DNA of 64,000 nucleotides from Histomonas meleagridis 2922-C6/04-290x (Eukaryota > Protista > Parabasalia): NCBI GenBank assembly GCA_020184695.1, contig JAANOX010000128.1:243982-307981 (forward strand), written 5' to 3'. Both the position numbers and the translations under genes were made by a program. How positions within the stretch are numbered: position 1 is the stretch's first letter; every line of letters begins with the position of its first letter. A model generated the notes under the pieces. The model searched no databases, was not told the origin of the DNA, and was given only the letters and a program-made list of their open reading frames with translations. This document shows, piece after piece, positions 31,214 through 63,808 of this stretch.

Positions 31214-32731
31214 TCAATTTCCTTCCTGTCCGAATTCCTCTGTCCATCTTTCGTACCTCTCCAAGTCGTCCGGGGACACGCTCGGCCGCACCTTCATCAG
31301 CGCCTGCTTGAAGTCGTCCATTGTCACTAGCGGCGGGTGCAGCAGCATCGGATCGACCTCCCTCCAGCCCATTCTGACTGCGCCGGGCTGGTCGGGGTTG
31401 CACGGCCACATCATTCCCTGGTACTCGCAGAAGTACTGCGCAGACTGCAAGTTGCGCAACGATACGAACGATGCCTCTCGTGTCAAGATTTTTATGTCGG
31501 CACCTGAGAACCCCTCTGTGAGTTGTCCGAGCTCGTGGAAATCGTTTTGTGTCAGTGAATGCGGCGTTTCTGTCATTCGATTGATCAATAGATATTCCCG
31601 AGATGCAATGTCAGGTAATGGAATATAGATTTTCTTCTCAAAGCGACGACGGACTGCGGGATCTAATGACCATGGAGTGTTCGTGGCAGCTAATAAAAGT
31701 ATCCCTTCCATGGATTTACCAACACCATCTAATTGGACTAAAAATTCGGTCTTGATGCGTCGGGAGGCTTCGGAATCATTGTCTGTGCGTTCGGATAAAA
31801 GAGAATCGATTTCATCAATAAATATAATGGACGGCTTTCGCTCACGAGCTGTGTTAAATAAGGCTCGAATAAGCTTCTCGGAGTCGCCAAGGTACTTGGA
31901 AACAAGATCGGAGGTAGAAACTGTGAGAAATGTAGAATTGTCAGATTCGGTGGCAGTGGCTTTGGCTAAAAAGGACTTCCCTGTGCCGGGAGGACCATAT
32001 AAGAGGATGCCGTGCCATGGAGAGCGCTCGCCAGTGAAGAATTGAGGAAGGCGCAATGGCAAAATTACGGCTTCTTCTAGTGCTTGCTTGGCAGATGAAA
32101 GGCCTGCAACATCATCGAACTTAATGTTGGGTTTTTCGATAAGAATGGCACTAGAAATTTTGTCTTTGAATTCATTCGATTCTTTGTCAGCTGCTGTGTT
32201 GACTGGATTAGATGCATTATTGTTTGTAGTATTGTTGGGAATATTAGGAGGAGGATTGGATGGGATATTGTTATTGTTAGAATCAAATGTATTAGGTGTA
32301 GTATTGGGATTTAAAGCATTTGGCGTTGTGTTCGGAGTTGTGGGATTTGTAAAACTTGCCTTAGGATTGAATGTATTTGGAGTCGTGTTAGGATTAATAG
32401 GACCGGAATAACTTGCACTGAGATCAGTTGGTGCTTGTTGTATGCCAGAAGCTCTGAGAACATTTGAACTACTTAAAGTTTCAACTCTTTGCTTACATTT
32501 TAATAGATAGTCATTTAGTGCGACAGATATTGGCTCTACAAATTTTTGTGGTTGTTGTTGAGCTAAATTAAACATACCAATTGCTTGACGATAATGTAAT
32601 AAAGCTTGTGCATAATTTCTTGCATTATCCAATGAAATGGCGCTTGAAAGACATCTGATTCCTCTATCAAAGTATTCTTTTGCAGGGTTTTTATCAAAGT
32701 AACTAGGCTTCATTTTGTTATCGATTGTCAT
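31214..32731 (-). CDS. VPS4: AAA ATPase Vps4 (MIT + AAA)
   Basis: MIT domain (ARNYAQALLHYRQAI), GILLYGPPGTGKSFLAKA, SDLVSKYLGDSEKL, IFIDEID, beta domain PCNPDQPGA, C-terminal WTEEFGQEG. Confidence 0.95.
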   Translation of the reverse strand: MTIDNKMKPSYFDKNPAKEYFDRGIRCLSSAISLDNARNYAQALLHYRQAIGMFNLAQQQPQKFVEPISVALNDYLLKCKQRVETLSSSNVLRASGIQQAPTDLSASYSGPINPNTTPNTFNPKASFTNPTTPNTTPNALNPNTTPNTFDSNNNNIPSNPPPNIPNNTTNNNASNPVNTAADKESNEFKDKISSAILIEKPNIKFDDVAGLSSAKQALEEAVILPLRLPQFFTGERSPWHGILLYGPPGTGKSFLAKATATESDNSTFLTVSTSDLVSKYLGDSEKLIRALFNTARERKPSIIFIDEIDSLLSERTDNDSEASRRIKTEFLVQLDGVGKSMEGILLLAATNTPWSLDPAVRRRFEKKIYIPLPDIASREYLLINRMTETPHSLTQNDFHELGQLTEGFSGADIKILTREASFVSLRNLQSAQYFCEYQGMMWPCNPDQPGAVRMGWREVDPMLLHPPLVTMDDFKQALMKVRPSVSPDDLERYERWTEEFGQEGN

Positions 32732-47297: not shown

Positions 47298-48173
47298 TCA
47301 GTTGTTATATGGTTTGGACGATGAAAAGAAGTAATGATTTGGTGAACTTTGTAATCTTCTTGTTAATGAATGTACAGGCGTAAGTATTAGCAAATTATTA
47401 AATGTTGTTTTTGTTTTTTGAAAATCAGGTAGAACGTTAATTATTTCGAAATTTGATATATCAAATGTTTTCTTAGGCTTTTGATCTATAGATATTATTA
47501 TCTGTTTTTGTATATTTGATATTGATTCTGTCATTGTTTGTATTTTATTTGATAAAATATCTTTTTCTGTTTTAAGTTTTTGAATTGATTCTTCGTAATT
47601 ATTAATTTTTTGTTCAAGTTTTCTGTTTTCTTCTTTGACTTTATGTTGAATTTCTTGATGGAGTTCTTGTTTGGCCTTTAAAAAATTAACAACTCTTTGT
47701 TTTTAAAGTTGTTCGATTTGTTCTTTTTGGAAATTGTTACAACGCATTTGAAAGTTATTTTCAACTGTTTTTGTGAATTGTGTATAGTTTTCTATTTGCT
47801 TCTTTAAAGTTTCTCGTTTAGAACTTATTTCATTCATTGTATTTTTACATATTTTTTTCTTTTCATTTATTTGCTCTGTTAAAAATGTTATTCGTTGAAG
47901 TTGTGCTTCAATATATTTTTCTTCTTCTTTTACTAAAATTCGATTTAAACTTCGTTCACATTCAGTCATTCTTTGTTTAATAAACTTTGAATAACATTCT
48001 TCAAGATCGACATTTTGTTGATTTATTAAATTTAATTTTTCTTCAATCTTTTTTGTCAATTTATCAATTTTAATTCTGGTTTCATTTGTTTTTTGTTGTA
48101 TCCATTGAGTGATTTCTTCCATTCGTTGAGCTTGAATATTGGAATCAATATCAAATGGGAAAACATTAAACAT
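47298..48173 (-). CDS. Coiled-coil protein with one in-frame TAA at 47703-47705
   Basis: ORFs 47703-48173 and 47298-47534 are in the same frame and the 56 codons between them are open: EQIEQL*KQRVVNFLKAKQELHQEIQHK... Confidence 0.65.
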
Positions 48174-53181: not shown

Positions 53182-56100
53182 ATGAATCCATTCAAATTGA
53201 CATCAGTTGTATGTTCCGAAGATCAAGTACGTGATGTCATGGGTGATTTTCAAACTAAAGTCGATCAATGGCATCGAACTACGTCAATTTCGTTTCGAGG
53301 CTCGAGGAGAAAAATTCAAGAAAAATATTGTCCAAACCAAATTGACCAAGAAGAAATGCCTCCACCAGATTCAGAACAATCCACGCCAATTATAACACTT
53401 AATAATTCATTTACGTCCAATACAAAAAATAAAGAATACGAAGATTTTGGTCCAACAATTCCACTCACACTTGTTGACAGTCGTCCAATTCGATGTAGTG
53501 AACTAAAATCGCGGAAAATAGAACCAAAAATTGAACCAAAAATAGATACAGGTAGGAAAACTGAACTCACCAAATTTATTGAATTAGAGAAATGGGTAAA
53601 CGAGCCATCAAGAGACATGTCTATTGAAATGCAAAGAAGACATATTGAAGAACAAAATGCATTTATCAGATCAAACTTACGACGTCGAATCCAGCCCGTA
53701 AGTCAGGTTACCCAAAAAGTCTTTCCCATGCCAAATTTGAACGGCAAACCAAAACCACAAAATACACCAATCACCTTATTTTACAGTAACCAACAATGCG
53801 CTCAAGGTCAATGGTCTATAATTTGGAACATTGAAAAATACCAAAATATTCCTTTAATACTTGATCGCAATGACAAATATATTGTACTTTCCGATAAATT
53901 AGATTCTGGTGAAAGAAAGAAAAGATCACTTCGGCAATGGGATAAACTGGAAATCCTTCCTCCAAACGATAATTATTATCTGCAACTTACTACAAAAAAA
54001 ACAGAAGGAAAAAATGTTGATATTCAACATTCGAATACAGCACTCTCTTTAGCACTCATTCAGCCTACTGTTGAAGATTTTGAGAACTTTCATCGGCCTA
54101 AATTCCTTCGTCCTTCAGTTTTACAAAGTCGATTAAATCAAGAATTCAAATTAGTCGGAATTGTAGATACTCAACCACATGATGACGAACACCTGATCTC
54201 TCCATATCTTAAAGAGCTTGATGACCTCAGTGCTCGTAATGGAATTGTATATGTTGTTGAACATACTGTTGAAGTTCCACCTTTAATGATGAATGTTGGA
54301 ATGTCATCACTCTTGATTACTTACTGGCATAAAGAAAACCCAAATGATACTCCACCAAAGTATGATAAAACGATGAAGATTCTTGAACCTGATGATGAGT
54401 CACCTTTTACTGCACAAATACCAAACAACAAAGGTGTACTAGCCATAACGAATTTGCTTTATCGTGTACCAGTTTTTCGTCATGAGCTTCATGATCAAAA
54501 TGACTTTTTGCTTATCAAAAGTGCCAAAGACGATAAGCAATTTTATGTCAGAAAATTTAATGCGATTTTTTGTGCTGGGATGCTTGAACCTCTTAAAGTC
54601 GTAATGCAACCTAGCTTAAAAGAGACGCAAAAGTTTATTGAAAGGTTCACGAAAGCAATGCTTATTAATATTTTTCGAGGAACAAAACAATATAAAGGTC
54701 GAAATCGATTTACACTTGCCAAAATTCAACAAGAATATTTCCCTGAAATGAACGAAACTAAACTTCGTAAGATTGTACAAAATTATGCCATTTTCTCACG
54801 TGAACAGACTAAACGTATATGGGAACTTAAGTCTTCAATGACGAAACAAGAACTTGACAAAAATTTCAATTCACTTAACATTACGCCGGAAGACGTTTGT
54901 TCGTATCAGTCAATGCTCGTCGGTTTATGGCGGTTGAAGAAAAGTGGCGTGAACATCTTAACGTCCTCCGAACGAGTTTTTCAAAAAATCAAAAAACTTA
55001 AAGGAACACTTACACAACTTATAGCTTCTAAGATAGAAATAGAGCTTATGAAAACTCCTTGGTCTAAAACCAAGAATTTTGATGGGGCTTTTCGATCAAA
55101 TGCTATGGAAACAATTAATGCAGAAGATGGACAAGTTTATCGGAGGAGAACTCGGAGGTCTAAGACAGGGCAAAGCGCACCAACGTATAAAGAACGTATA
55201 GCTTCAACAAACAAAGATCTTCGAACACTTACACTTAATGAATTGAAAGATAATCTTATGCAATTTAGTGTTCCATTATCCAAAATCAAAACTTTAACAC
55301 GATGGCAGCAAGTTCAACTCTTGGCAAAGTTAGCCACACATTCGAAAGATCTATCTGATGAATCCGCTAAACACAATGTCCTTGTAGATCGCTATGCTCG
55401 AGGCCCACGTAATGTATATCAAGCCTCCCTTGACAAATACAAGGCTCAATACCAATCTACGTTCGATTCTAATTTAATATATATATCATCTGATGAGAAC
55501 GAAAGTGAAGCAGATTCAGGCAACGACGCGTTATTGGATGAGCTTGGCCTTGAAGTTGTCCATAATGATTTAGATGATGATGATGACGTCGATTTAGATT
55601 TGGATAATCTCGAAGACGATGGGACCGAAAAACAAGACAAAGCATTAAACGTCAGCATGGATGACCCCCCGCAACTTCGTCCATATAGTATTTACACGTA
55701 TCCGAGTCATGTCGATTGGGATTCATTAGGGTTCGAAAATGTCCCACGTCGAACGATTGCGAAGATAATTAATGTCTCGTTCACAGAGAATGGCCTCGAG
55801 CTAAACATTAATTGGGAACGACGTCGTGAGAAGATCGAAGAATTAAAGCGCAAGAAGTCGAATGTTTATCCCGCTGAATCACCATTAGACTTTCGCGAAG
55901 ATGTGTATAAGAAGCGGAAGAAAAATCTTCAAAAGATCAAGAAATGGAAATTAAGTACAAAACAAATGCCAACGAATGCACCGTACAAAGAGTTTGACAA
56001 TTATTTCACTGAAGATTTATTGGTACAAGACAACAAGAACAATAGCCAATATTGTTTTGTGTTTTCTCCGAAGATTAAATCACAAATAAATCGAGCGGCG

Positions 56101-56514
56101 GAACGATTCCATGAATTCGAAAGACAAATCAGCAAAAGATCATATAATAGTAACGCAAAAGATCAAAGTTATGATAACGATGAACAAAATGATGACGAAT
56201 ATCATAACAGGAAAACGAAACTCGATAAAAACATACGAAAGAAAAAGGCAAAAGGATCAAATCCAATCGAAAAGTTTAACCATTACTGCAGTAAGTATTT
56301 GAACCTGTTTAATAAGTTTAACCATCTGCAGAAGTATAAAGAAATAGAACAGAAAACAAAAGATGCAAAGTATAAAAAAGCAGAGGACTTCTGGAGAGAT
56401 ATGGAGGCGCTGAAGCCTTTGACGAACGAAGAATGCAGTAGAAAATACGATAAGAATATTGTGCGGCATAAGGAAAGGTTTATGAAGCTGGAAAAAAGAA
56501 TTCCAAACTTTTAA
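53182..56514 (+). CDS. TAF1: TFIID subunit TAF1 (DUF3591 region)
   Basis: DLSARNGIVYVVEHTVEVPPLMMNVGMSS..YW, NLLYRVPVFRH, DFLLIKS, ITPEDVCSYQSMLVG, IEIELMKTPWSKT. Confidence 0.85.
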   Translation: MNPFKLTSVVCSEDQVRDVMGDFQTKVDQWHRTTSISFRGSRRKIQEKYCPNQIDQEEMPPPDSEQSTPIITLNNSFTSNTKNKEYEDFGPTIPLTLVDSRPIRCSELKSRKIEPKIEPKIDTGRKTELTKFIELEKWVNEPSRDMSIEMQRRHIEEQNAFIRSNLRRRIQPVSQVTQKVFPMPNLNGKPKPQNTPITLFYSNQQCAQGQWSIIWNIEKYQNIPLILDRNDKYIVLSDKLDSGERKKRSLRQWDKLEILPPNDNYYLQLTTKKTEGKNVDIQHSNTALSLALIQPTVEDFENFHRPKFLRPSVLQSRLNQEFKLVGIVDTQPHDDEHLISPYLKELDDLSARNGIVYVVEHTVEVPPLMMNVGMSSLLITYWHKENPNDTPPKYDKTMKILEPDDESPFTAQIPNNKGVLAITNLLYRVPVFRHELHDQNDFLLIKSAKDDKQFYVRKFNAIFCAGMLEPLKVVMQPSLKETQKFIERFTKAMLINIFRGTKQYKGRNRFTLAKIQQEYFPEMNETKLRKIVQNYAIFSREQTKRIWELKSSMTKQELDKNFNSLNITPEDVCSYQSMLVGLWRLKKSGVNILTSSERVFQKIKKLKGTLTQLIASKIEIELMKTPWSKTKNFDGAFRSNAMETINAEDGQVYRRRTRRSKTGQSAPTYKERIASTNKDLRTLTLNELKDNLMQFSVPLSKIKTLTRWQQVQLLAKLATHSKDLSDESAKHNVLVDRYARGPRNVYQASLDKYKAQYQSTFDSNLIYISSDENESEADSGNDALLDELGLEVVHNDLDDDDDVDLDLDNLEDDGTEKQDKALNVSMDDPPQLRPYSIYTYPSHVDWDSLGFENVPRRTIAKIINVSFTENGLELNINWERRREKIEELKRKKSNVYPAESPLDFREDVYKKRKKNLQKIKKWKLSTKQMPTNAPYKEFDNYFTEDLLVQDNKNNSQYCFVFSPKIKSQINRAAERFHEFERQISKRSYNSNAKDQSYDNDEQNDDEYHNRKTKLDKNIRKKKAKGSNPIEKFNHYCSKYLNLFNKFNHLQKYKEIEQKTKDAKYKKAEDFWRDMEALKPLTNEECSRKYDKNIVRHKERFMKLEKRIPNF

Positions 56515-57399: not shown

Positions 57400-58047
57400 T
57401 TATTTTAGATGTTTATTTCTAGCACAACTTAGAATCTTTGTTTTAATGCATAATCCCAAAGCATTTACTGATATTGTGGATGTTTCTTCTAATTGATTTT
57501 CATAAATATATTTAAAGATATCATTTCGATGAAATTCAATTGCAGCTTCATATGCACATTTAAATGTTGAATGATTTTGTTCACATAAATGAATGATTTC
57601 AAGATTTCCACCTGCAACTGCATATTTACCTGTATTTTCTATATCAGAACCATTTATAAGTAAATATTTAAAACATTTAACTGAAGAAAAAAATGCTGCA
57701 TAATCAACTAATGTAACATTATATTGATTAATAAATGAACATCTTTCATAAAATGATGGCTCAATTTTCTGGTTAAAATCAAAGTTTGTTTGTGATGATA
57801 TTTCTTGAAGTTTTTCTATTGCATCATTTCGAATTATTTTAGCAATTTCATTTGGATTCTCATCTTCATTCTGTTCTTTACTCGAAGAATCGTTTGAATC
57901 GTTTTCATTGTTTTCCAAAGTTTTACTGAATGAATCATCAAAATTCTTTTCTTTCATTTTTTTAATCAGACAATCATTTTTGTTTATTTTGTCTTTTGAT
58001 ATATACCATTTAAAATTCTCAATAATATTTGGGAAATTTGTATTCAT
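57400..58047 (-). pseudogene. Truncated DUF3447-family gene, locus D, without ankyrin tail
   Basis: NPNEIAKIIRNDAIEKLQ...LVDYAAFFSSVKCFKY...YAVAGGNLEII; homology ends abruptly after LGLCIK. Confidence 0.65.
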
Positions 58048-58181
58048 TTCTTTTTCCTTCGTTTGAATCGTTTTTAAATATTTTAAATATGTATTTAACC
58101 TTTTCTTTTGGACACAGAATGAATTATAAATTAAATTACAAATATTTATAACATTTATTTACTTTCATGATATGAAATATT

Positions 58182-61052
58182 TCAATTTTCGTCTTCAGGT
58201 ACTGGATGCTTCTCAAAGAACTCTTCCCAATATTGTGTTCCTAAGTCGAATGTATCAACAAATTTAATATGGAGTTCTTCAGCATAGAATGCGCTTGGGT
58301 TCTTATTCGGGTACATTTCCTTATCTCCTGTGTACGAATCAGGTATATTTTCATCGAAATACTGAATCGCTGCCTTTCTAATTCCTCTTGAGTACTTCCC
58401 ATTAGATGTATATTGTTTATAGTCGTTTGAGTCCTGGAAGTAAATAGTTCTAATCCATCCATCATCATCATATTTCACACCATATATTGTCATTGCATGA
58501 AGACCGCCCCAGTATTCTGCGCCAAAACCAGTGAACCAGTTCTTTTCGAATGCTTGAGTAAATACTTCGTTAAATTGCTTTCGTGATATACCTGTAACTC
58601 TTATTGGATTGTTAAATGCTAACTGTGCATCACCGAATACATCTTTAAAGTATCCGCCATTATCAACTGTTTCAGAGCCACTAATGTACCATTTAAATCC
58701 ATTGACTGCATAGCCTCCATCATTAGGCCAATTCTTACGAAAATCATCGAATACACCGCTATCCCATTCACCGCCATATGTTCCATTAACTTTAGATTTG
58801 TTTGGATACAATTTATAGTATTTTTCGATATAATGTTTGTTATTCTCTATGAACCAGTGAAGTGCATTGGATGCAGCAGCGGCCCAACACATATTACCAT
58901 CACTTCCCCATTCTGATGGATAATGCTTCTTACAGTCCCACCATTTACCTGAGTCATATTCTTTGATCCATGGAATTGTATAAACATCTGTATTAGCATA
59001 CATTAATACCAGTCTATCTTTGGTGAAATTTGTAATTCCCTTTAACCAAACTGTTTTACCTCTATACTTTAAGTTATTTCCGCCGACATTGTCATTTACT
59101 TTTTCTTCATATACTGCAAAAAGTGTTATATCCTCTGTTATTGTTCCTTTTTTGAAACATGCATTATCTATATAGTAATCTGGGGTTTTAGCACCTGCTG
59201 TGCGACTCCATCCGATTAATGGAGCTTCATTTTTGGTGATTTTGTTTAAGTAGTTAGGGAAGTATACTTCACTGTTTAAGTGATTCTTTTTATCAACATA
59301 TAATGGTTCAACATCCCCAGTTCCATTTTGAATATCGAATGTAACAGTCCAATAATCATTTGACCATTGTGCATATAAATTCCAAATTCCTTTGTCTTCT
59401 CCTTTGTTTGAAAACACTTGGTAATACGAGAATAAAAAAGTCCATTCGTTAAGGGTTGGATCTGATGCCCATCCAACAAATGCTTTACCATCATTAGTAA
59501 TTTGTTTTGGTGGTCTGTCGAGATATACTCTGATAGAATTATCAGTAAGTGAAACAAGTTGTCCTTCAACTGCACCTTCGCCACCATTCATATTATACTT
59601 AATAAGGAAATAACCTGATGGAATGTTTTCAACCCATTTTGCATATAATGTGATTGAACCAGTGAATGTAAATGGAAATTCAACACGTGTATCTTCAGTA
59701 CATTCCTTTGATGAATACCATCCAGCAAAATCATAGCCAAAGTTATGAAAAGTTGAATAAAAATCATTAACAAGATCACCAATAGAATATGATTGTGATG
59801 GCATTGTACCAAATCCTCCATTAGCATCGAATGATACTGTTTCATCGGAATAAAAATCTCGAGCATATAACTCAAGAGATTGAGTGATAGTATATGGGAA
59901 AGAAATTTTCGATCGAACTGGATGTACAAATTCATTAACAATAGTTCCATTTACATATGTTTCAGTTTTATCTTTAGTTGTTCCATCATTGTAATGGAAT
60001 GTGATGTCGTAATAAATATATTTGGTCCAAATCACTTTGAAGGTAACATTTTGCTTGAAATTATATGGGAATTTAACCTTTTCTCCAGTTGTAACTTCAA
60101 TGAAACCATCAAAGTATACATCATTAGATGGTGGTGCGAATGTGTTTGCCATTTCATTTACAGGAAGTGTAGCATCGCATCGTAATGAATCTAAAGTGCC
60201 TTCACCGCCGTTTCCATCGAAAGTAATTTCACCATCAACTTGTGTAAGAGATTCCCACTTCGGATATAATGTGAGATTTTGTTTGAAAGTAGTAGGGAAC
60301 TCAACTGGTGTTGTCCAATTGTATTCATAGTACCAACCACCAAAGTTATAACCAGTACGTCGATATGCATTTGGTATACTATCGACTATTGTTATAGATG
60401 TGATATTCAATGGATACATAAAGTTAATGCCTCCGAGATCATGGAAACTGATTTGAACAGGGAATTCGACTTCAGACCATTTCGCATATAAAGTAACATC
60501 GTTTTCCACAACATATGGAAATTCAATATCTGCACCATTAGGTTGAGTGGACCAACCGCCTATGTAATGGTTTTCTTTCGTGAAGTTTATGGAAAATTGT
60601 AAAATTATTTGTCCTTGATTAAGTACTTGCTTAACTTCTGTACCTTCGCCACCATTTGGATTAAATGTAATGTATTTCAAATCAGGTAATGGAATAGGTG
60701 TTGGAGGGGACGTAGGGTCGATTACAGGTGTAGGAGCGGACGTAGGGTCGATTACAGGTGTAGGAGCGGACGTAGGGTCGATTACAGGTGTTGGAGCGGA
60801 CGTAGGGTCGATTGCAGGTGTAGGAGTTGCAGGAGTAAATGTTGAAGAAGATGGAGAGGAACTATCTTGTGTAGGTGCTTTAGCATCTGAATCAGATGTT
60901 AAAACAACAGCTAAGATAATTACAATTGCAATAACAACTATACCAATTGATGCGCCAATGATAATTTTTTTCTTAGTACAGCTACTTGGTGATGAATCTT
61001 AATAAGAGTCGATGTCATCACTTAATTTATCCATGTCATTGAGTTCATTCAT
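58182..61052 (-). CDS. Type II membrane protein: TM, S/T/P stalk, InlB B-repeat (Listeria-Bacteroides) domains, C-terminal IdeS/Mac-1 cysteine protease; in-frame TAA at codon 18
   Basis: ATG 61052 after a TCA Inr, TAA 60999-61001, TM IIIGASIGIVVIAIVIILAVVL, repeats ITFDxNGGxG...GW...TLYAKW, WWDCKK..DGNMCWAAAASNALHWF, LHAMTIYG..IYFQDSND. Confidence 0.8.
60697..60826 (-). repeat. About 4.3 copies of a 30-bp coding repeat (PTPVIDPTSA)
   Basis: Units start at 60697, 60727, 60757, 60787. Confidence 0.9.
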
Positions 61053-61733
61053 GGTTTTTATGAGATGATGACATCGAACCTCGAGGTTTTACAGACAGAT
61101 CTGTCAGTGAAGAAGAATCAAAACTGTAATTAGCTTTGAAAATTCTGATAGTAAATTGTTATGTCGTAAACTGTTAACAATAACCATTTTCAAATTTGAA
61201 AAAATATTCAACGGTTTGAACTTGGTGAAAAACTTTGTGAAAGGAGTTTTTGTGTGGTTGTATGGAAGAGCTTCCAATGAAAAACAGCTTCAATGTCATC
61301 GTCTTTTTATGACGACGGTTAGTGATTTCGAGCGTATATATGTGTAAACTGTGTTTAGAGCTCAGCACTGATAATACAGGCAAACTATTCAATGTTTCTC
61401 TTGGAATGAAATGCTCAATTGCATTATAAGTATTTCCATATATATACACACACACAGCGGGGCCTCCATTCCTTCGGAATTTCAGCCCGGTTATAAAAAG
61501 ATATATCATTTGCAGAATTACTTTGTCACAAGGACCGGTTTAATTACAAAAAATTAATTATTTAAGACTTTGCTATGTGCTGATTTTATTTTTGAATGTT
61601 TGAATTTTGGAGTATATATCCTTACATGATAATGATAAATATTAGGTTTTTAAAAGTTAGTATTTTGAATACACATATATATCTAACATAATAATGATAA
61701 TTCATATTACTTCAAAAATTATATTTTAAAATG

Positions 61734-62051
61734 ATGTTCCCTGTTCCTGGATGTTCCGGGGGGAACAACATTCATCTAAAAGTTGAGGGCAAAAGGCAAA
61801 TCGGCAATAAGCAATCGGCAAAATGCTTTATGCTTATTAAATCAATTTCTATATTTATATATTCTCATATAAGAACTAGGAAGGAACATACTATAAAATA
61901 CATGAATTATTAGGGGGATGTTTGTATACACATGCCCAAAATACGCTGTTAATGTTGCCCTGTTGCCAAAATCTGTTGCCCAGTTGCCCTTTGCCCCTAA
62001 CTCTTAAGGTAATGTTCATGAACCGGGTACAAGCAGGAACAAGGGGAACAT
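61734..62051. repeat. Imperfect inverted repeat, arms about 90-100 bp, with GGCAA/TTGCC iterations
   Basis: Left arm 61734-61823 aligns to the reverse complement of 61954-62051. Confidence 0.7.
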
Positions 62052-62443
62052 TCAATTATCTATGAAATTCAAGGTTAATTTACTGTACTTTTGATACGTT
62101 GAATATTAATTAAAAATAAGATTTCTTCAATACACACACACACACAGCGCTATTGAAGCTTCGCGTGATACGCTCGCTTCAAGCCGCGCTACATAAAAGA
62201 AAGCATTAACGATAGAGGATGATTGAAAATTAGGATTAACGGTAGGTTTTAAGGAAACATGTGCGAAAAATAAAAATATTAAAACCTTACTTACTCTTAC
62301 CTAACTTACCTATAAAAACTAGAAAATTTAAGAAAGAGGATAAATACATGCGGACAAAAACCAAGGTAAGTAAGAGTAAGGTAAGTAAGGAAATTAAGCT
62401 TAGTTTTGAAGTAGTTTTTTGTTTTTTTATTCTTACTAAAAAG

Positions 62444-63808
62444 ATGTCAGAGGTAAGTATTGATATAAACAACAAATTCAATCTAATGGATATTAGAAAT
62501 AATGCTCCCTATGATTTAAACGGAGATGACGCAATAATCGATTTAAAGAAATGTTTTTTAGTATGTGATTCAACACCTGAAGTATTTATGTTTAAAGATT
62601 ATGACGCAGTGAATGATTATGTTAAAGTAAGTTATACATCAGAAAACGTTGCAAAACAAAAGCTAAAGAAAATAATTATTGGCAAAAGAACTGAAGGAAA
62701 CAAAACAAAAAACGTTTCCGCTTGGGATTTATATTTAGAAAATACAGAAATATTTACGGTAAAAGCATTAAAATTTTATTCCGAAGACCCTCAAATTTTT
62801 ACTTACTTTAGAGGTTATGATTATAAAAAGCTTGATAAAGTAAAAACAGAAATTATACAACCGTTTTTAGATCATGTAAGAGAAGTAATAGCAAATGGAA
62901 ATGAAGAAATTTATAGATATATTTTAATTTGGGTCGGGAGCATTCTTCAAAAACCAAATTTCAAAACTGGAGTTGCATCAGTTATATTAGGAAATTAAGG
63001 AACAGGAAAAAATACATTTTTTACAGATGTAATATGCAAATTAATTGCAAGATACGCAAATGAAAACGTTACAAATATTGAGTCAGTCGTAGGAAAATTT
63101 AATGCAACATTAGAAAACAAAAAGCTATCGGTTATAAATGAATTACACAGTATTGATACTAATAAATTTTTAAATTCCGATGCGTTAAAATATATTATAA
63201 CAGATAAAACAATAAATATAAATCGAAAGAATGAACCGATGAGAGAAACAGAAAATGTTGCGAATTTTATAATGGTATCGAATAATGATGTTCCAATAAA
63301 GATTGAAAGTTATGATAGAAGATATGTTGTAACAAAAACAAGTGATAAGCATTTACAAGATTTTGATTATTTCTCAAAACTTGCTGATTCATTCACGCCT
63401 GAATTTTATGAAAATTTATTTACATTTTTCATGTTAATGGATGTGTCGAAAGTAAATTTAAGAAGAATTCCGAACAGTGAAGCAAAAGAAAATATAAAAG
63501 AAGCTTCAATGTCAAGTTATGAAATATTCGCTAGAGACAATTACGAAAAAATCAAAAACATAACAGGTCCTGATTTATTTAATTTATATTGTGATTTTGT
63601 TGAAAAAAATAAATTCAACAGTTGCAGTTCAAGGACTTTTATTGCAAATATGAAAAAATTCACTGGAAATGCTTCTGCAAAAAGGATTGATGGAAAAGTA
63701 TTTAAAGTATATAATTTATTGCCAGAAGTTTATGATAGGTTTGAAAAATATCACAAAAAATTAGAAGAACAAATAGTTGATGATGAAGTTGATGATGATG
63801 CTTTATGA
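62444..63808 (+). pseudogene. SF3 (D5/NrS-1-like) helicase of viral or Maverick type; TAA inside Walker A
   Basis: ILGN*GTGKN (TAA 62996-62998), VGKFNA, LSVINE, LKYIIT, FIMVSNN, DRRY; ORFs 62261-62998 and 63239-63808 are in frame with open sequence between. Confidence 0.8.

What the first reader, a model, noticed from the sequence alone, without database searches (positions are those of the whole stretch)
58182..61052. Surface-anchored IdeS/Mac-1-type protease in a protist, probably from bacteria
Seen: the C-terminal about 290 aa have WWDCKK...DGNMCWAAAASNALHWFIENNK (Cys codon 58887-58889), LHAMTIYGVKYDDDG (His 58497-58499) and IYFQDSND (58422-58433). Known: streptococcal IdeS has a C-x-AA-x-A-x-N-x-LHWW motif, a catalytic His followed by I/L-W-G, and Y-x-x-D-S-D, and cleaves IgG. 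The domain follows about seven InlB B-type repeats typical of gut bacterial surface proteins, but here it is fitted to a eukaryotic type II anchor and mucin-like stalk. Inference: a laterally acquired, displayed protease that may cleave host immunoglobulin.
Basis: partly seen in the sequence, partly recalled or inferred. Interest (0 to 1): 0.8.

Follow-up and report, generated by a model that had tools for sequence, protein, structure and literature searches.

The report
Interrupted bacterial-type Mac-1 protease gene, Histomonas
The poultry parasite Histomonas meleagridis carries a gene of bacterial origin for a membrane-anchored IdeS/Mac-1-type cysteine protease, but this copy has a stop codon before its anchor, and what the family cuts in birds is unknown.

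Summary
The C-terminal ~305 aa are an IdeS/Mac-1 (peptidase C66) domain. Pfam Mac-1 scores 45.6 bits against a cut-off of 20.3. The AF2 model (pLDDT 92) matches only IdeS, Mac-1, IdeC and T-Mac structures at E 1e-14 to 1e-16. Equivalents of Lys84, Cys94, His262 and Asp284 are all present. Seven Listeria-Bacteroides repeats, a Pro/Thr stalk with a 30-nt tandem repeat, and a type II anchor precede the domain.

The window is Histomonas meleagridis (contig length equals the published N50). Neighbouring genes are eukaryotic, composition is native, and the cultures were monoxenic with E. coli, so this is not a contaminant. Eight eukaryote-anchored homologues form one clade (100/100) nested among gut-bacterial lipoproteins, including chicken-gut Barnesiella and Mucispirillum MAGs. 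That supports lateral acquisition.

It is present in DNA and RNA contigs. TAA ends 11 of 16 long ORFs in the window. This transcribed copy is therefore probably silenced.

An intact paralogue (P0002) lies elsewhere in the genome. A third paralogue has Cys replaced by Ser; the scan had already flagged it on other DNA (s1-309662).

Immunoglobulin cleavage is untested; the best-matching solved relative, T-Mac, cleaves complement, not IgG or IgA. GenBank already labels the gene 'Mac 1'.

The parts
61002..61052 (-). Ancestral start codon (61050-61052) and the first 17 codons of the cytoplasmic tail (MNELND...)
   Evidence: The N-terminus resembles those of paralogues P0002 (MNED...) and P0092 (MQEN...).
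60999..61001 (-). In-frame TAA stop, codon 18; this is where the reading frame breaks
   Evidence: DNA contig 60762-61475 and RNA contigs 60762-61090 and 60788-61090 show 0 differences. All 7 sampled words of 60950-61050 are held by both DNA samples and 4 RNA samples. TAA ends 11 of 16 long ORFs in the window.
60900..60965 (-). Single hydrophobic transmembrane segment of 22 residues, preceded by CTKKK and followed by TSDSD; this indicates type II (N-in) topology
   Evidence: Read directly from the sequence. The same layout occurs in P0002, P0003, P0008, P0011, P0012 and P0092.
60681..60899 (-). Pro/Thr/Ser-rich stalk, including 4.4 copies of a 30-nt tandem repeat (60696-60826) encoding PTPVIDPTSA
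   Evidence: Short-read contigs break at this repeat, between 60737 and 60762.
59103..60680 (-). Seven Listeria-Bacteroides (Flg_new / InlB B-type) repeats; the fourth lacks about 17 residues, including the G-W core, relative to paralogues
   Evidence: Pfam PF09479 at 119-121 bits with 6 stretches; alignment A1.
58185..59102 (-). Mac-1/IdeS (peptidase C66) domain. Lys 58926-58928, Cys 58887-58889, His 58497-58499, Asp 58431-58433, Asn 58425-58427
58182..58184 (-). Stop codon TGA
58136..61090 (-). Extent of the RNA-run contigs, taken as the transcript. Flanks 57879-58075 and 61228-61424 have zero depth in the RNA runs but are covered in the DNA run
   Evidence: X3 records 14 and 15, X4 record 24.
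60417..60419 (-). Internal ATG used by the public 745-aa gene model (P0001). Nine out-of-frame ATGs lie between the TAA and this codon
60985..61455 (-). Intron predicted in the other strain's 938-aa model (P0156, 'Mac 1'), which joins a 14-nt exon (61456-61469, MEAP) to the ORF and so skips the TAA. RNA does not support it
   Evidence: No joint was reported, RNA contigs run unspliced through 60984/60985, and RNA depth is 0 at 61228-61424.

Best explanation
This is a Histomonas meleagridis nuclear gene that descends from a gut-bacterial surface lipoprotein of the [Listeria-Bacteroides repeat]n-Mac-1 type. In the protist lineage the bacterial lipoprotein signal was replaced by a short cytoplasmic tail, a single-pass type II anchor and a Pro/Thr stalk. 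The repeats and a papain-fold thiol protease, with Lys, Cys, His and Asp/Asn all present, would thus be held outside the cell.

Shown: domain identity and fold; intact catalytic residues; a eukaryotic genomic setting; transcription; a single eukaryote clade nested among bacterial sequences; and three paralogues in this genome.

Also shown: in this copy a TAA at codon 18, before the anchor, interrupts the frame in both DNA and RNA.

Inferred: this copy is a recently silenced, still-transcribed paralogue that makes no anchored protein. The other 938 codons remain open, which argues that the break is recent. The displayed-protease role then falls to the intact paralogue P0002.

Inferred: the intact enzyme cleaves extracellular host defence proteins (avian immunoglobulin or complement) or other luminal proteins. 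The substrate is unknown.
For: Family and fold:
- Pfam Mac-1 45.6 bits against a cut-off of 20.3, and Flg_new 121 bits.
- Single-sequence phmmer against the PDB: T-Mac 7e-12, IdeS 5e-10.
- Family profile against IdeS 2au1 3.9e-48, near full length.
- AF2 model pLDDT 92.3, pTM 0.90.
- The top 12 Foldseek PDB hits are all IdeS, Mac-1, IdeC or T-Mac at E 2.8e-16 to 2.5e-14 and TM 0.63-0.72; the next hit is calpain at 6e-3.
- AFDB cluster hits are named 'Mac 1' or 'Ig protease IdeS'.
- Catalytic columns: Cys and His are invariant in 72 bacterial rows and present here. Asp is at the D284 position and Asn at the D286 (T-Mac N585) position.

Host genome:
- Neighbours are a TAF1-like DUF3591 protein and a DUF3447 ankyrin protein.
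- GC 36% and GC3 25% fall within the range of the window's other ORFs.
- The cultures were monoxenic with E. coli DH5alpha.

Transcription and the stop.

Paralogues and relatives. A metagenomic relative sits beside DUSP-UCH and chromo-shadow genes.

Lateral transfer:
- In the careful ML tree the 8 anchored rows form a clade at 100/100, inside a 31-row set at 99/84 that includes Barnesiella merdipullorum and Mucispirillum faecigallinarum MAG sequences.
- Bacterial P0031 has six or more Flg_new repeats followed by Mac-1 behind a lipoprotein signal. Its repeat-protease junction resembles the one here.
Against: - Apart from the single TAA the ORF is intact for 938 codons and all catalytic residues are kept. 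A functional allele, heterozygosity or read-through therefore cannot be excluded; Logan contigs drop minor variants.
- The DNA and RNA runs probably come from one clonal laboratory lineage, so field parasites may differ.
- No protein evidence exists either way. None of the paralogue accessions, nor 'Mac 1', appear in the held surfaceome or immunoprecipitation supplements.
- The tree is unrooted; the direction of transfer rests on distribution (361 mostly bacterial hits against one small eukaryote clade).
- Run X4 shows zero laid depth over the gene body although it holds 0.92 of the sampled words. This is unexplained.
Confidence: 0.7

Rival explanations
1. The gene is functional as an anchored protease. 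Either the TAA is bypassed by occasional read-through or context-dependent decoding, or an intact second allele exists that contig-level data hide.
For: There are 938 open codons after the TAA with every catalytic residue kept. The transcript is still made. The ATG and tail are homologous to those of the paralogues. A second in-frame TAA sits inside the Walker A motif of the neighbouring D5-like gene at 62996-62998.
Against: TAA terminates 11 of 16 long ORFs in the window, and no long conserved ORF contains one. No variant was listed at 60999-61001 in four runs. The D5-like gene sits beside highly repeated DNA, a setting where decayed copies are expected.
Confidence: 0.15
2. The true product is the spliced 938-aa model of the attenuated-strain annotation (KAH0790876.1, 'Mac 1'). 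In that model a 14-nt first exon (MEAP) is joined over a 471-nt intron that removes the ATG region and the TAA.
For: The model has GT...AG ends and yields an ORF with the anchor.
Against: RNA contigs in two runs cross the proposed acceptor unspliced up to 61090. No joint was reported, and RNA depth is zero at 61228-61424. The proposed exon lies at the edge of highly repeated DNA with depth above 24,000. The displaced region encodes a tail homologous to the paralogues' N-termini. From my own knowledge, the conserved parabasalid 3' intron motif ACTAACACACAG is absent.
Confidence: 0.04
3. Translation starts at the internal ATG (60417-60419). This gives the annotated 745-aa protein without an anchor or signal, that is, an intracellular repeat-protease.
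For: This is the public model for the virulent strain (P0001).
Against: Nine out-of-frame ATGs lie between the TAA and this codon. The model starts in the middle of repeat 2. The 193 codons upstream are open and homologous to the anchor, stalk and first repeat of the paralogues.
Confidence: 0.05
4. The family acts mainly as a binder or decoy rather than a protease. It would be an adhesin through the repeats, or a non-cleaving ligand of host immune proteins.
For: The T-Mac pre-protein also has a non-proteolytic N-terminal unit (abstract of PMC11833123).
Against: The window copy, P0002 and all six metagenomic relatives keep Lys, Cys, His and Asp.
Confidence: 0.1
5. The region is a bacterial contaminant or an assembly mis-join.
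For: The nearest non-protist relatives are gut bacteria.
Against: The region lies in a 673-kb contig between eukaryotic genes. It has native composition. A eukaryote-type anchor is shared with paralogues on other contigs. The short-read DNA contig 57972-60737 reaches into the ankyrin gene, and 60762-61475 runs 420 nt upstream of the ATG. RNA coverage is gene-bounded. The cultures contained only E. coli DH5alpha.
Confidence: 0.01

Closest known systems
IdeS / Mac-1 of Streptococcus pyogenes (peptidase family C66; PDB 1Y08, 2AU1, 8A47)
   Same: Same papain-like fold (Foldseek E about 1e-15, TM 0.64-0.72). The family profile matches at 3.9e-48. The Lys, Cys and His positions correspond, with Asp at the D284 position, and the C-x-A-A-x-x-x-N-x-L-H-W motif is present.
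   Different: Only about 20% identity. Asn replaces D286. IdeS is a secreted single-domain enzyme, whereas this protein has a membrane anchor, a stalk and seven repeats. IdeS is strictly IgG-specific; no substrate is known here.
T-Mac (TDE0362 / C0362) of Treponema denticola (PDB 9ARC, 9MDK)
   Same: Top match among solved structures by single-sequence phmmer (7e-12) and by Foldseek (2.8e-16). It has Asn at the position equivalent to N585. It is a multidomain surface protein of an anaerobe, with beta-rich domains before the protease.
   Different: T-Mac cleaves C3, C3b, C4 and factor H and does not cleave IgG or IgA (PMC11833123). It has Big domains rather than Flg_new repeats, and it is bacterial.
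IgM protease IdeC of Streptococcus canis (PDB 9HB1, 9HB2)
   Same: Same family and fold.
   Different: Gram-positive secreted or wall-bound protein. It is deposited as an IgM protease, which shows that substrate choice varies within the family.
Gut-bacterial lipoproteins with Flg_new repeat(s) followed by Mac-1: P0031 and Candidatus Mucispirillum faecigallinarum L003; Mfa-like + Flg_new + Mac-1 proteins P0014 and P0015; Candidatus Barnesiella merdipullorum L004
   Same: Nearest non-eukaryotic relatives (31-37% identity). They share the repeat-to-protease junction (GG..KY.G.T.W.KGI). P0031 has the same multi-repeat + Mac-1 order.
   Different: They carry lipoprotein signal peptides rather than a type II anchor and have no Pro/Thr stalk. 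Many have Gln at the Lys84 position (23 of 72 bacterial rows). None has been functionally characterised, to my knowledge.
Laterally acquired bacterial-type surface and secreted proteins of trichomonads (for example NlpC/P60 hydrolases; PMC10461829, PMC12612818)
   Same: The same evolutionary pattern: genes from mucosal bacteria adopted by parabasalids.
   Different: A different enzyme family. The PMC12612818 main text has no occurrence of Mac-1, IdeS, PF09028 or PF09479. PMC10461829 was not read and is cited from its abstract only.

Membership tests
Peptidase C66 / Pfam Mac-1 (PF09028), IdeS-like | Sequence match above the curated family threshold | tested here: met
   45.6 bits against a gathering score of 20.3. 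A profile of 40 relatives matches IdeS at 3.9e-48.
Peptidase C66 / Pfam Mac-1 (PF09028), IdeS-like | Papain-like alpha/beta fold superposable on IdeS or Mac-1 | tested here: met
   AF2 model pLDDT 92.3. The 12 best PDB matches are all family members at E of 2.5e-14 or lower; the next fold is at 6e-3.
Peptidase C66 / Pfam Mac-1 (PF09028), IdeS-like | Catalytic Cys (IdeS C94), His (H262), Asp/Asn (D284; T-Mac N585) and oxyanion Lys (K84) | tested here: met
   C88, H218, D240/N242 and K75 of the domain align to those columns. Cys and His are invariant in 72 bacterial rows.
Peptidase C66 / Pfam Mac-1 (PF09028), IdeS-like | Thiol-dependent endopeptidase activity | not testable with these tools
   Needs a recombinant enzyme assay.
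Immunoglobulin-degrading enzymes (IdeS sensu stricto) | Specific cleavage of an immunoglobulin hinge | not testable with these tools
   Family members differ: IdeS cleaves IgG, IdeC is deposited as an IgM protease, and T-Mac cleaves complement but not IgG or IgA.
Listeria-Bacteroides repeat proteins (PF09479) | Tandem ~70-aa repeats matching the HMM | tested here: met
   121 bits with 6 stretches. A seventh repeat with an internal deletion is seen in alignment A1.
Type II single-pass membrane protein | Short N-terminal tail with basic residues followed by one hydrophobic span, with no cleavable signal | tested here: met
   KKK followed by 22 hydrophobic residues and then acidic residues; conserved in six homologues. 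Topology itself is inferred.
Intact protein-coding gene | Uninterrupted frame from the start codon through anchor, repeats and protease | tested here: not met
   TAA at 60999-61001, present in DNA and RNA contigs. The two public models avoid it in different ways.
Bacteria-to-eukaryote lateral gene transfer | Eukaryote sequences form one clade nested among bacterial ones, and the gene is integrated in a eukaryotic chromosome | tested here: met
   Clade 100/100 within a set supported 99/84, with eukaryotic neighbours. The tree is unrooted and the donor phylum is unresolved.

The most novel reading that the evidence does not exclude
Histomonas and some unidentified gut parabasalids maintain a eukaryote-specific clade of membrane-displayed C66 proteases, taken from caecal bacteria, that cut avian antibody or complement at the parasite surface. 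The three diverged H. meleagridis copies (one intact, one stop-interrupted but transcribed, one Cys-to-Ser) would then be a functionally differentiated set of active enzyme, switchable reserve and non-cleaving decoy, rather than simple decay.
Probability: 0.15. Interest if true: 0.75.

Novelty: new member of a known kind. Interest (0 to 1): 0.45.

Why it matters
IdeS-family proteases are known as bacterial immune-evasion enzymes. A displayed version in a eukaryotic poultry pathogen would be a concrete, testable candidate for how Histomonas deals with host humoral defences, at a time when licensed treatment and prophylaxis are unavailable (PMC8529796, PMC11832935). It is also a clean case of a protist adopting a whole repeat-plus-protease module, probably from bacteria of its own gut niche, and re-fitting it with a eukaryotic anchor. 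For this locus the practical points are more modest. The copy is interrupted, and the two public gene models (745 aa and 938 aa) are both work-arounds for that break. Functional work should start from the intact paralogue.

Tried and rejected
- Alternative genetic code: rejected. TAA ends 11 of 16 long ORFs, and ORFs of more than 1000 aa contain none.
- Assembly error at the TAA: rejected at contig level by short-read DNA and RNA contigs.
- The TAA as a difference between the virulent and attenuated strains: rejected, because both DNA samples hold the same words.
- Synteny with the paralogue locus L001: none seen.
- P0092 as a C-terminally truncated paralogue: rejected. The genomic ORF in L022 continues to 938 aa, and the 749-aa model is a gene-model artefact.
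- The search for related loci with the 40- and 9-sequence alignments failed for lack of conserved stretches. A 5-sequence alignment worked.
- A 61-base query to the look-up of sequencing runs was too short.
- Literature searches for IdeS, C66 or Mac-1 in parabasalids, and Histomonas genome, surfaceome and immunoprecipitation papers with their held supplements, gave no mention.
- DNA for the metagenomic protist contigs (ERZ17292902-4) could not be fetched, so their organism is unidentified.
Full report
**Observation.** The gene lies on the minus strand. The Cys codon TGT is at 58887-58889 and the His codon CAT at 58497-58499. IYFQDSND is at 58422-58445; the quoted range covers only DSND. ATG is at 61050-61052 and TGA at 58182-58184. 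The stretch 58182-61052 is not an open frame, however. Translation shows a TAA at 60999-61001. That is codon 18, after MNELNDMDKLSDDIDSY and 11 codons before the hydrophobic segment. Downstream of it 938 codons are open.

**What the protein parts are.**
- Pfam gives Flg_new PF09479 at 121 bits and Mac-1 PF09028 at 45.6 bits against a cut-off of 20.3.
- At a permissive threshold six repeats are detected. The alignment with paralogues shows a seventh, the fourth in order, which has lost about 17 residues including its G-W core.
- The stalk holds 4.4 copies of a 30-nt repeat at 60696-60826.
- The C-terminal 322 aa match solved IdeS-family chains by sequence: T-Mac C0362 at 7e-12, IdeS at 5e-10, and the IgM protease at 2e-6.
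- A 40-sequence profile matches IdeS nearly full length at 3.9e-48.
- An AF2 model built on that alignment has pLDDT 92.3 and pTM 0.90.
- Its 12 best PDB matches are all T-Mac, Mac-1, IdeS or IdeC, at E 2.8e-16 to 2.5e-14 and TM 0.63-0.72. The next match is calpain at 6e-3.
- AFDB cluster matches are named 'Mac 1' or 'Ig protease IdeS'.
- In the alignment the window protein has Lys at the IdeS K84 column, Cys at C94, His at H262, Asp at D284 and Asn at D286. The last is the position of the catalytic Asn585 of T-Mac.
- Cys and His are invariant in all 72 bacterial rows.

**Whose genome.** The window's own annotated protein (P0001, 745 aa) sits on a contig of 673,467 bp. That is exactly the N50 reported for the virulent Histomonas meleagridis assembly (PMC8529796, Table 1). 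Neighbours are a TAF1-like DUF3591 protein (53182-56514) and a DUF3447 ankyrin protein (57400-58047). GC (36%) and GC3 (25%) lie within the range of the window's other long ORFs. The sequenced cultures were monoxenic with E. coli DH5alpha, so a Bacteroidota-like contaminant is not expected. Short-read DNA contigs cover 57972-60737 and 60762-61475 without a difference. The gap between them is the 30-nt tandem repeat.

**Transcription and the stop.** Contigs from RNA runs of a 2023 study cover 58136-60737 and 60762-61090 with no difference. The flanks 57879-58075 and 61228-61424 have zero RNA depth although DNA covers them. The signal is therefore gene-bounded rather than DNA carry-over. These contigs include the TAA. 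All seven sampled 31-mers of 60950-61050 are held by both DNA samples and four RNA samples. The stop is thus not an assembly error and not a virulent/attenuated difference. TAA ends 11 of the 16 ORFs of 300 aa or more in the window, so it is an ordinary stop in this genome.

The two public annotations avoid the break in different ways:
- The virulent-strain model starts at an internal ATG (60417-60419), in the middle of repeat 2, and gives 745 aa. Nine out-of-frame ATGs precede that codon.
- The attenuated-strain model (KAH0790876.1, named 'Mac 1', 938 aa, P0156) invents a 14-nt exon (61456-61469) and a 471-nt intron (60985-61455).

No RNA joint supports that intron, and RNA contigs cross its acceptor unspliced. 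The displaced 17 codons resemble the N-termini of the paralogues (MNED... and MQEN...). The ATG at 61052 is therefore the ancestral start, and the TAA is a break in an otherwise intact gene.

**Relatives.** The word-indexed search found P0002 at 46% identity. It is 959 aa and named 'repeat protein' in Histomonas meleagridis. It has an intact tail, anchor, stalk, repeats and protease, and lies on another contig. It is a paralogue. A third paralogue is P0092, named 'Listeria repeat-containing protein'. Its genomic ORF in L022 is 938 aa. It keeps His and Asp but has Ser in place of the catalytic Cys.

The exhaustive search found 361 hits at E of 1e-3 or lower. The best ones after the window's own protein have the same eukaryote-type anchor: P0003, P0008, P0011 and P0012, plus fragments P0009, P0010, P0013 and P0016. 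All come only from ENA assemblies ERZ17292902-4. One such contig also carries DUSP-UCH and chromo-shadow genes, so it is eukaryotic. No named Trichomonas or Tritrichomonas protein appeared among the 7 hits of the source-named search or among the anchor-type hits whose sources I looked up. The other listed hits mostly begin with bacterial-type signal or lipoprotein sequences. These include Mfa-like + Flg_new + Mac-1 proteins (P0004, P0005, P0014, P0015). P0031 has six or more Flg_new repeats followed by Mac-1. The repeat-to-protease junction is conserved between these and the window protein.

**Phylogeny.** A scan of GTDB genomes returned 19 loci. The best were Candidatus Mucispirillum faecigallinarum, Candidatus Barnesiella merdipullorum and Candidatus Alistipes merdipullorum, all chicken-gut MAGs, followed by other Bacteroidales, Streptococcus and Lachnospiraceae. 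The tree has 80 rows and 323 columns (IQ-TREE, LG+C20+F+G4 PMSF, careful search). In it the eight anchored sequences form one clade at 100/100. That clade lies inside a 31-row set at 99/84 whose other members are bacterial, including the Barnesiella and Mucispirillum sequences. The tree is unrooted. Given the distribution, transfer from bacteria into a parabasalid ancestor followed by duplication is the economical reading. The donor phylum is not resolved. The chicken-gut origin of the nearest named relatives is suggestive but biased by the choice of query.

**How it would work.** Shown: the anatomy and the catalytic residues. Inferred: basic residues before the span and acidic residues after it place the N-terminus in the cytoplasm. 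The stalk, repeats and protease would then face outward. The enzyme would act as a thiol endopeptidase on extracellular proteins.

The substrate cannot be read from family membership. IdeS cuts IgG, IdeC is deposited as an IgM protease, and T-Mac cuts C3, C3b, C4 and factor H but not IgG or IgA (PMC11833123). For this copy the most likely state is a recently silenced, still-transcribed paralogue. Read-through or a hidden intact allele cannot be excluded with contig-level data.

**Comparison and novelty.** The protein passes every sequence and structure test for the C66 / Mac-1 family, so it is a member. Its eukaryotic anchor and stalk are new trimmings on a bacterial [repeat]n-Mac-1 module that also exists in bacteria. 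GenBank's automatic name for the attenuated-strain model is already 'Mac 1'. None of the papers searched mentions this family in parabasalids. I rate it a new member of a known kind and of moderate interest, lowered for this locus by the break.

**Unexplained.** Run X4 holds 0.92 of the gene's sampled words but shows zero laid depth over 58076-60636.

Noticed in passing
window 62261-63808 (+): This is a D5-like primase/helicase ORF; PHROG 'DNA primase' scores 2e-7 for the second half. It is split by an in-frame TAA at 62996-62998 that falls inside the Walker A motif (G-N-stop-G-T-G-K-N). It is probably a decayed virus- or Maverick-like element. It is also a second in-frame TAA within 2 kb of the first.
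   Followed up: partly
window 61425-62400: Summed DNA word depth is 24,000-84,000 here against about 500 over the Mac-1 gene. The DNA immediately upstream of the gene is therefore highly repeated in the genome. The exon 1 predicted in the attenuated-strain model lies at its edge.
   Followed up: no
window 57400-58047 (-): A DUF3447/ankyrin gene belongs to a very large repeated family. Summed DNA word depth reaches 1.6 million, with many variant joints and loose ends in DNA and RNA contigs.
   Followed up: no
L022:3001-5817 (H. meleagridis attenuated-strain contig JAANOX010000205.1): The third paralogue is a full 938-aa ORF. Its public model (P0092, 749 aa) stops short. The catalytic Cys is replaced by Ser (motif HMSGHAHASNAIHHF), while His and Asp are kept.
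   Followed up: partly
window 59900-59960 region (repeat 4 of the gene): There is an in-frame loss of about 17 residues, including the G-W core of the fourth Listeria-Bacteroides repeat, relative to P0002 and P0003 (alignment A1, columns 410-427).
   Followed up: no
window 47703-47705 (-) and 31626-31628 (+): Two more places have open stretches of 130 codons or more on both sides of a single stop (a TAA and a TAG respectively). They may be split or decayed genes.
   Followed up: no
ENA assemblies ERZ17292902, ERZ17292903, ERZ17292904: These assemblies hold at least six distinct anchored [Flg_new]n-Mac-1 genes at 37-46% identity to the window protein. They lie on compact contigs, one of which carries DUSP-UCH and chromo-shadow genes and one an ankyrin gene. 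This points to an unidentified protist, or several, with an expanded family.
   Followed up: partly
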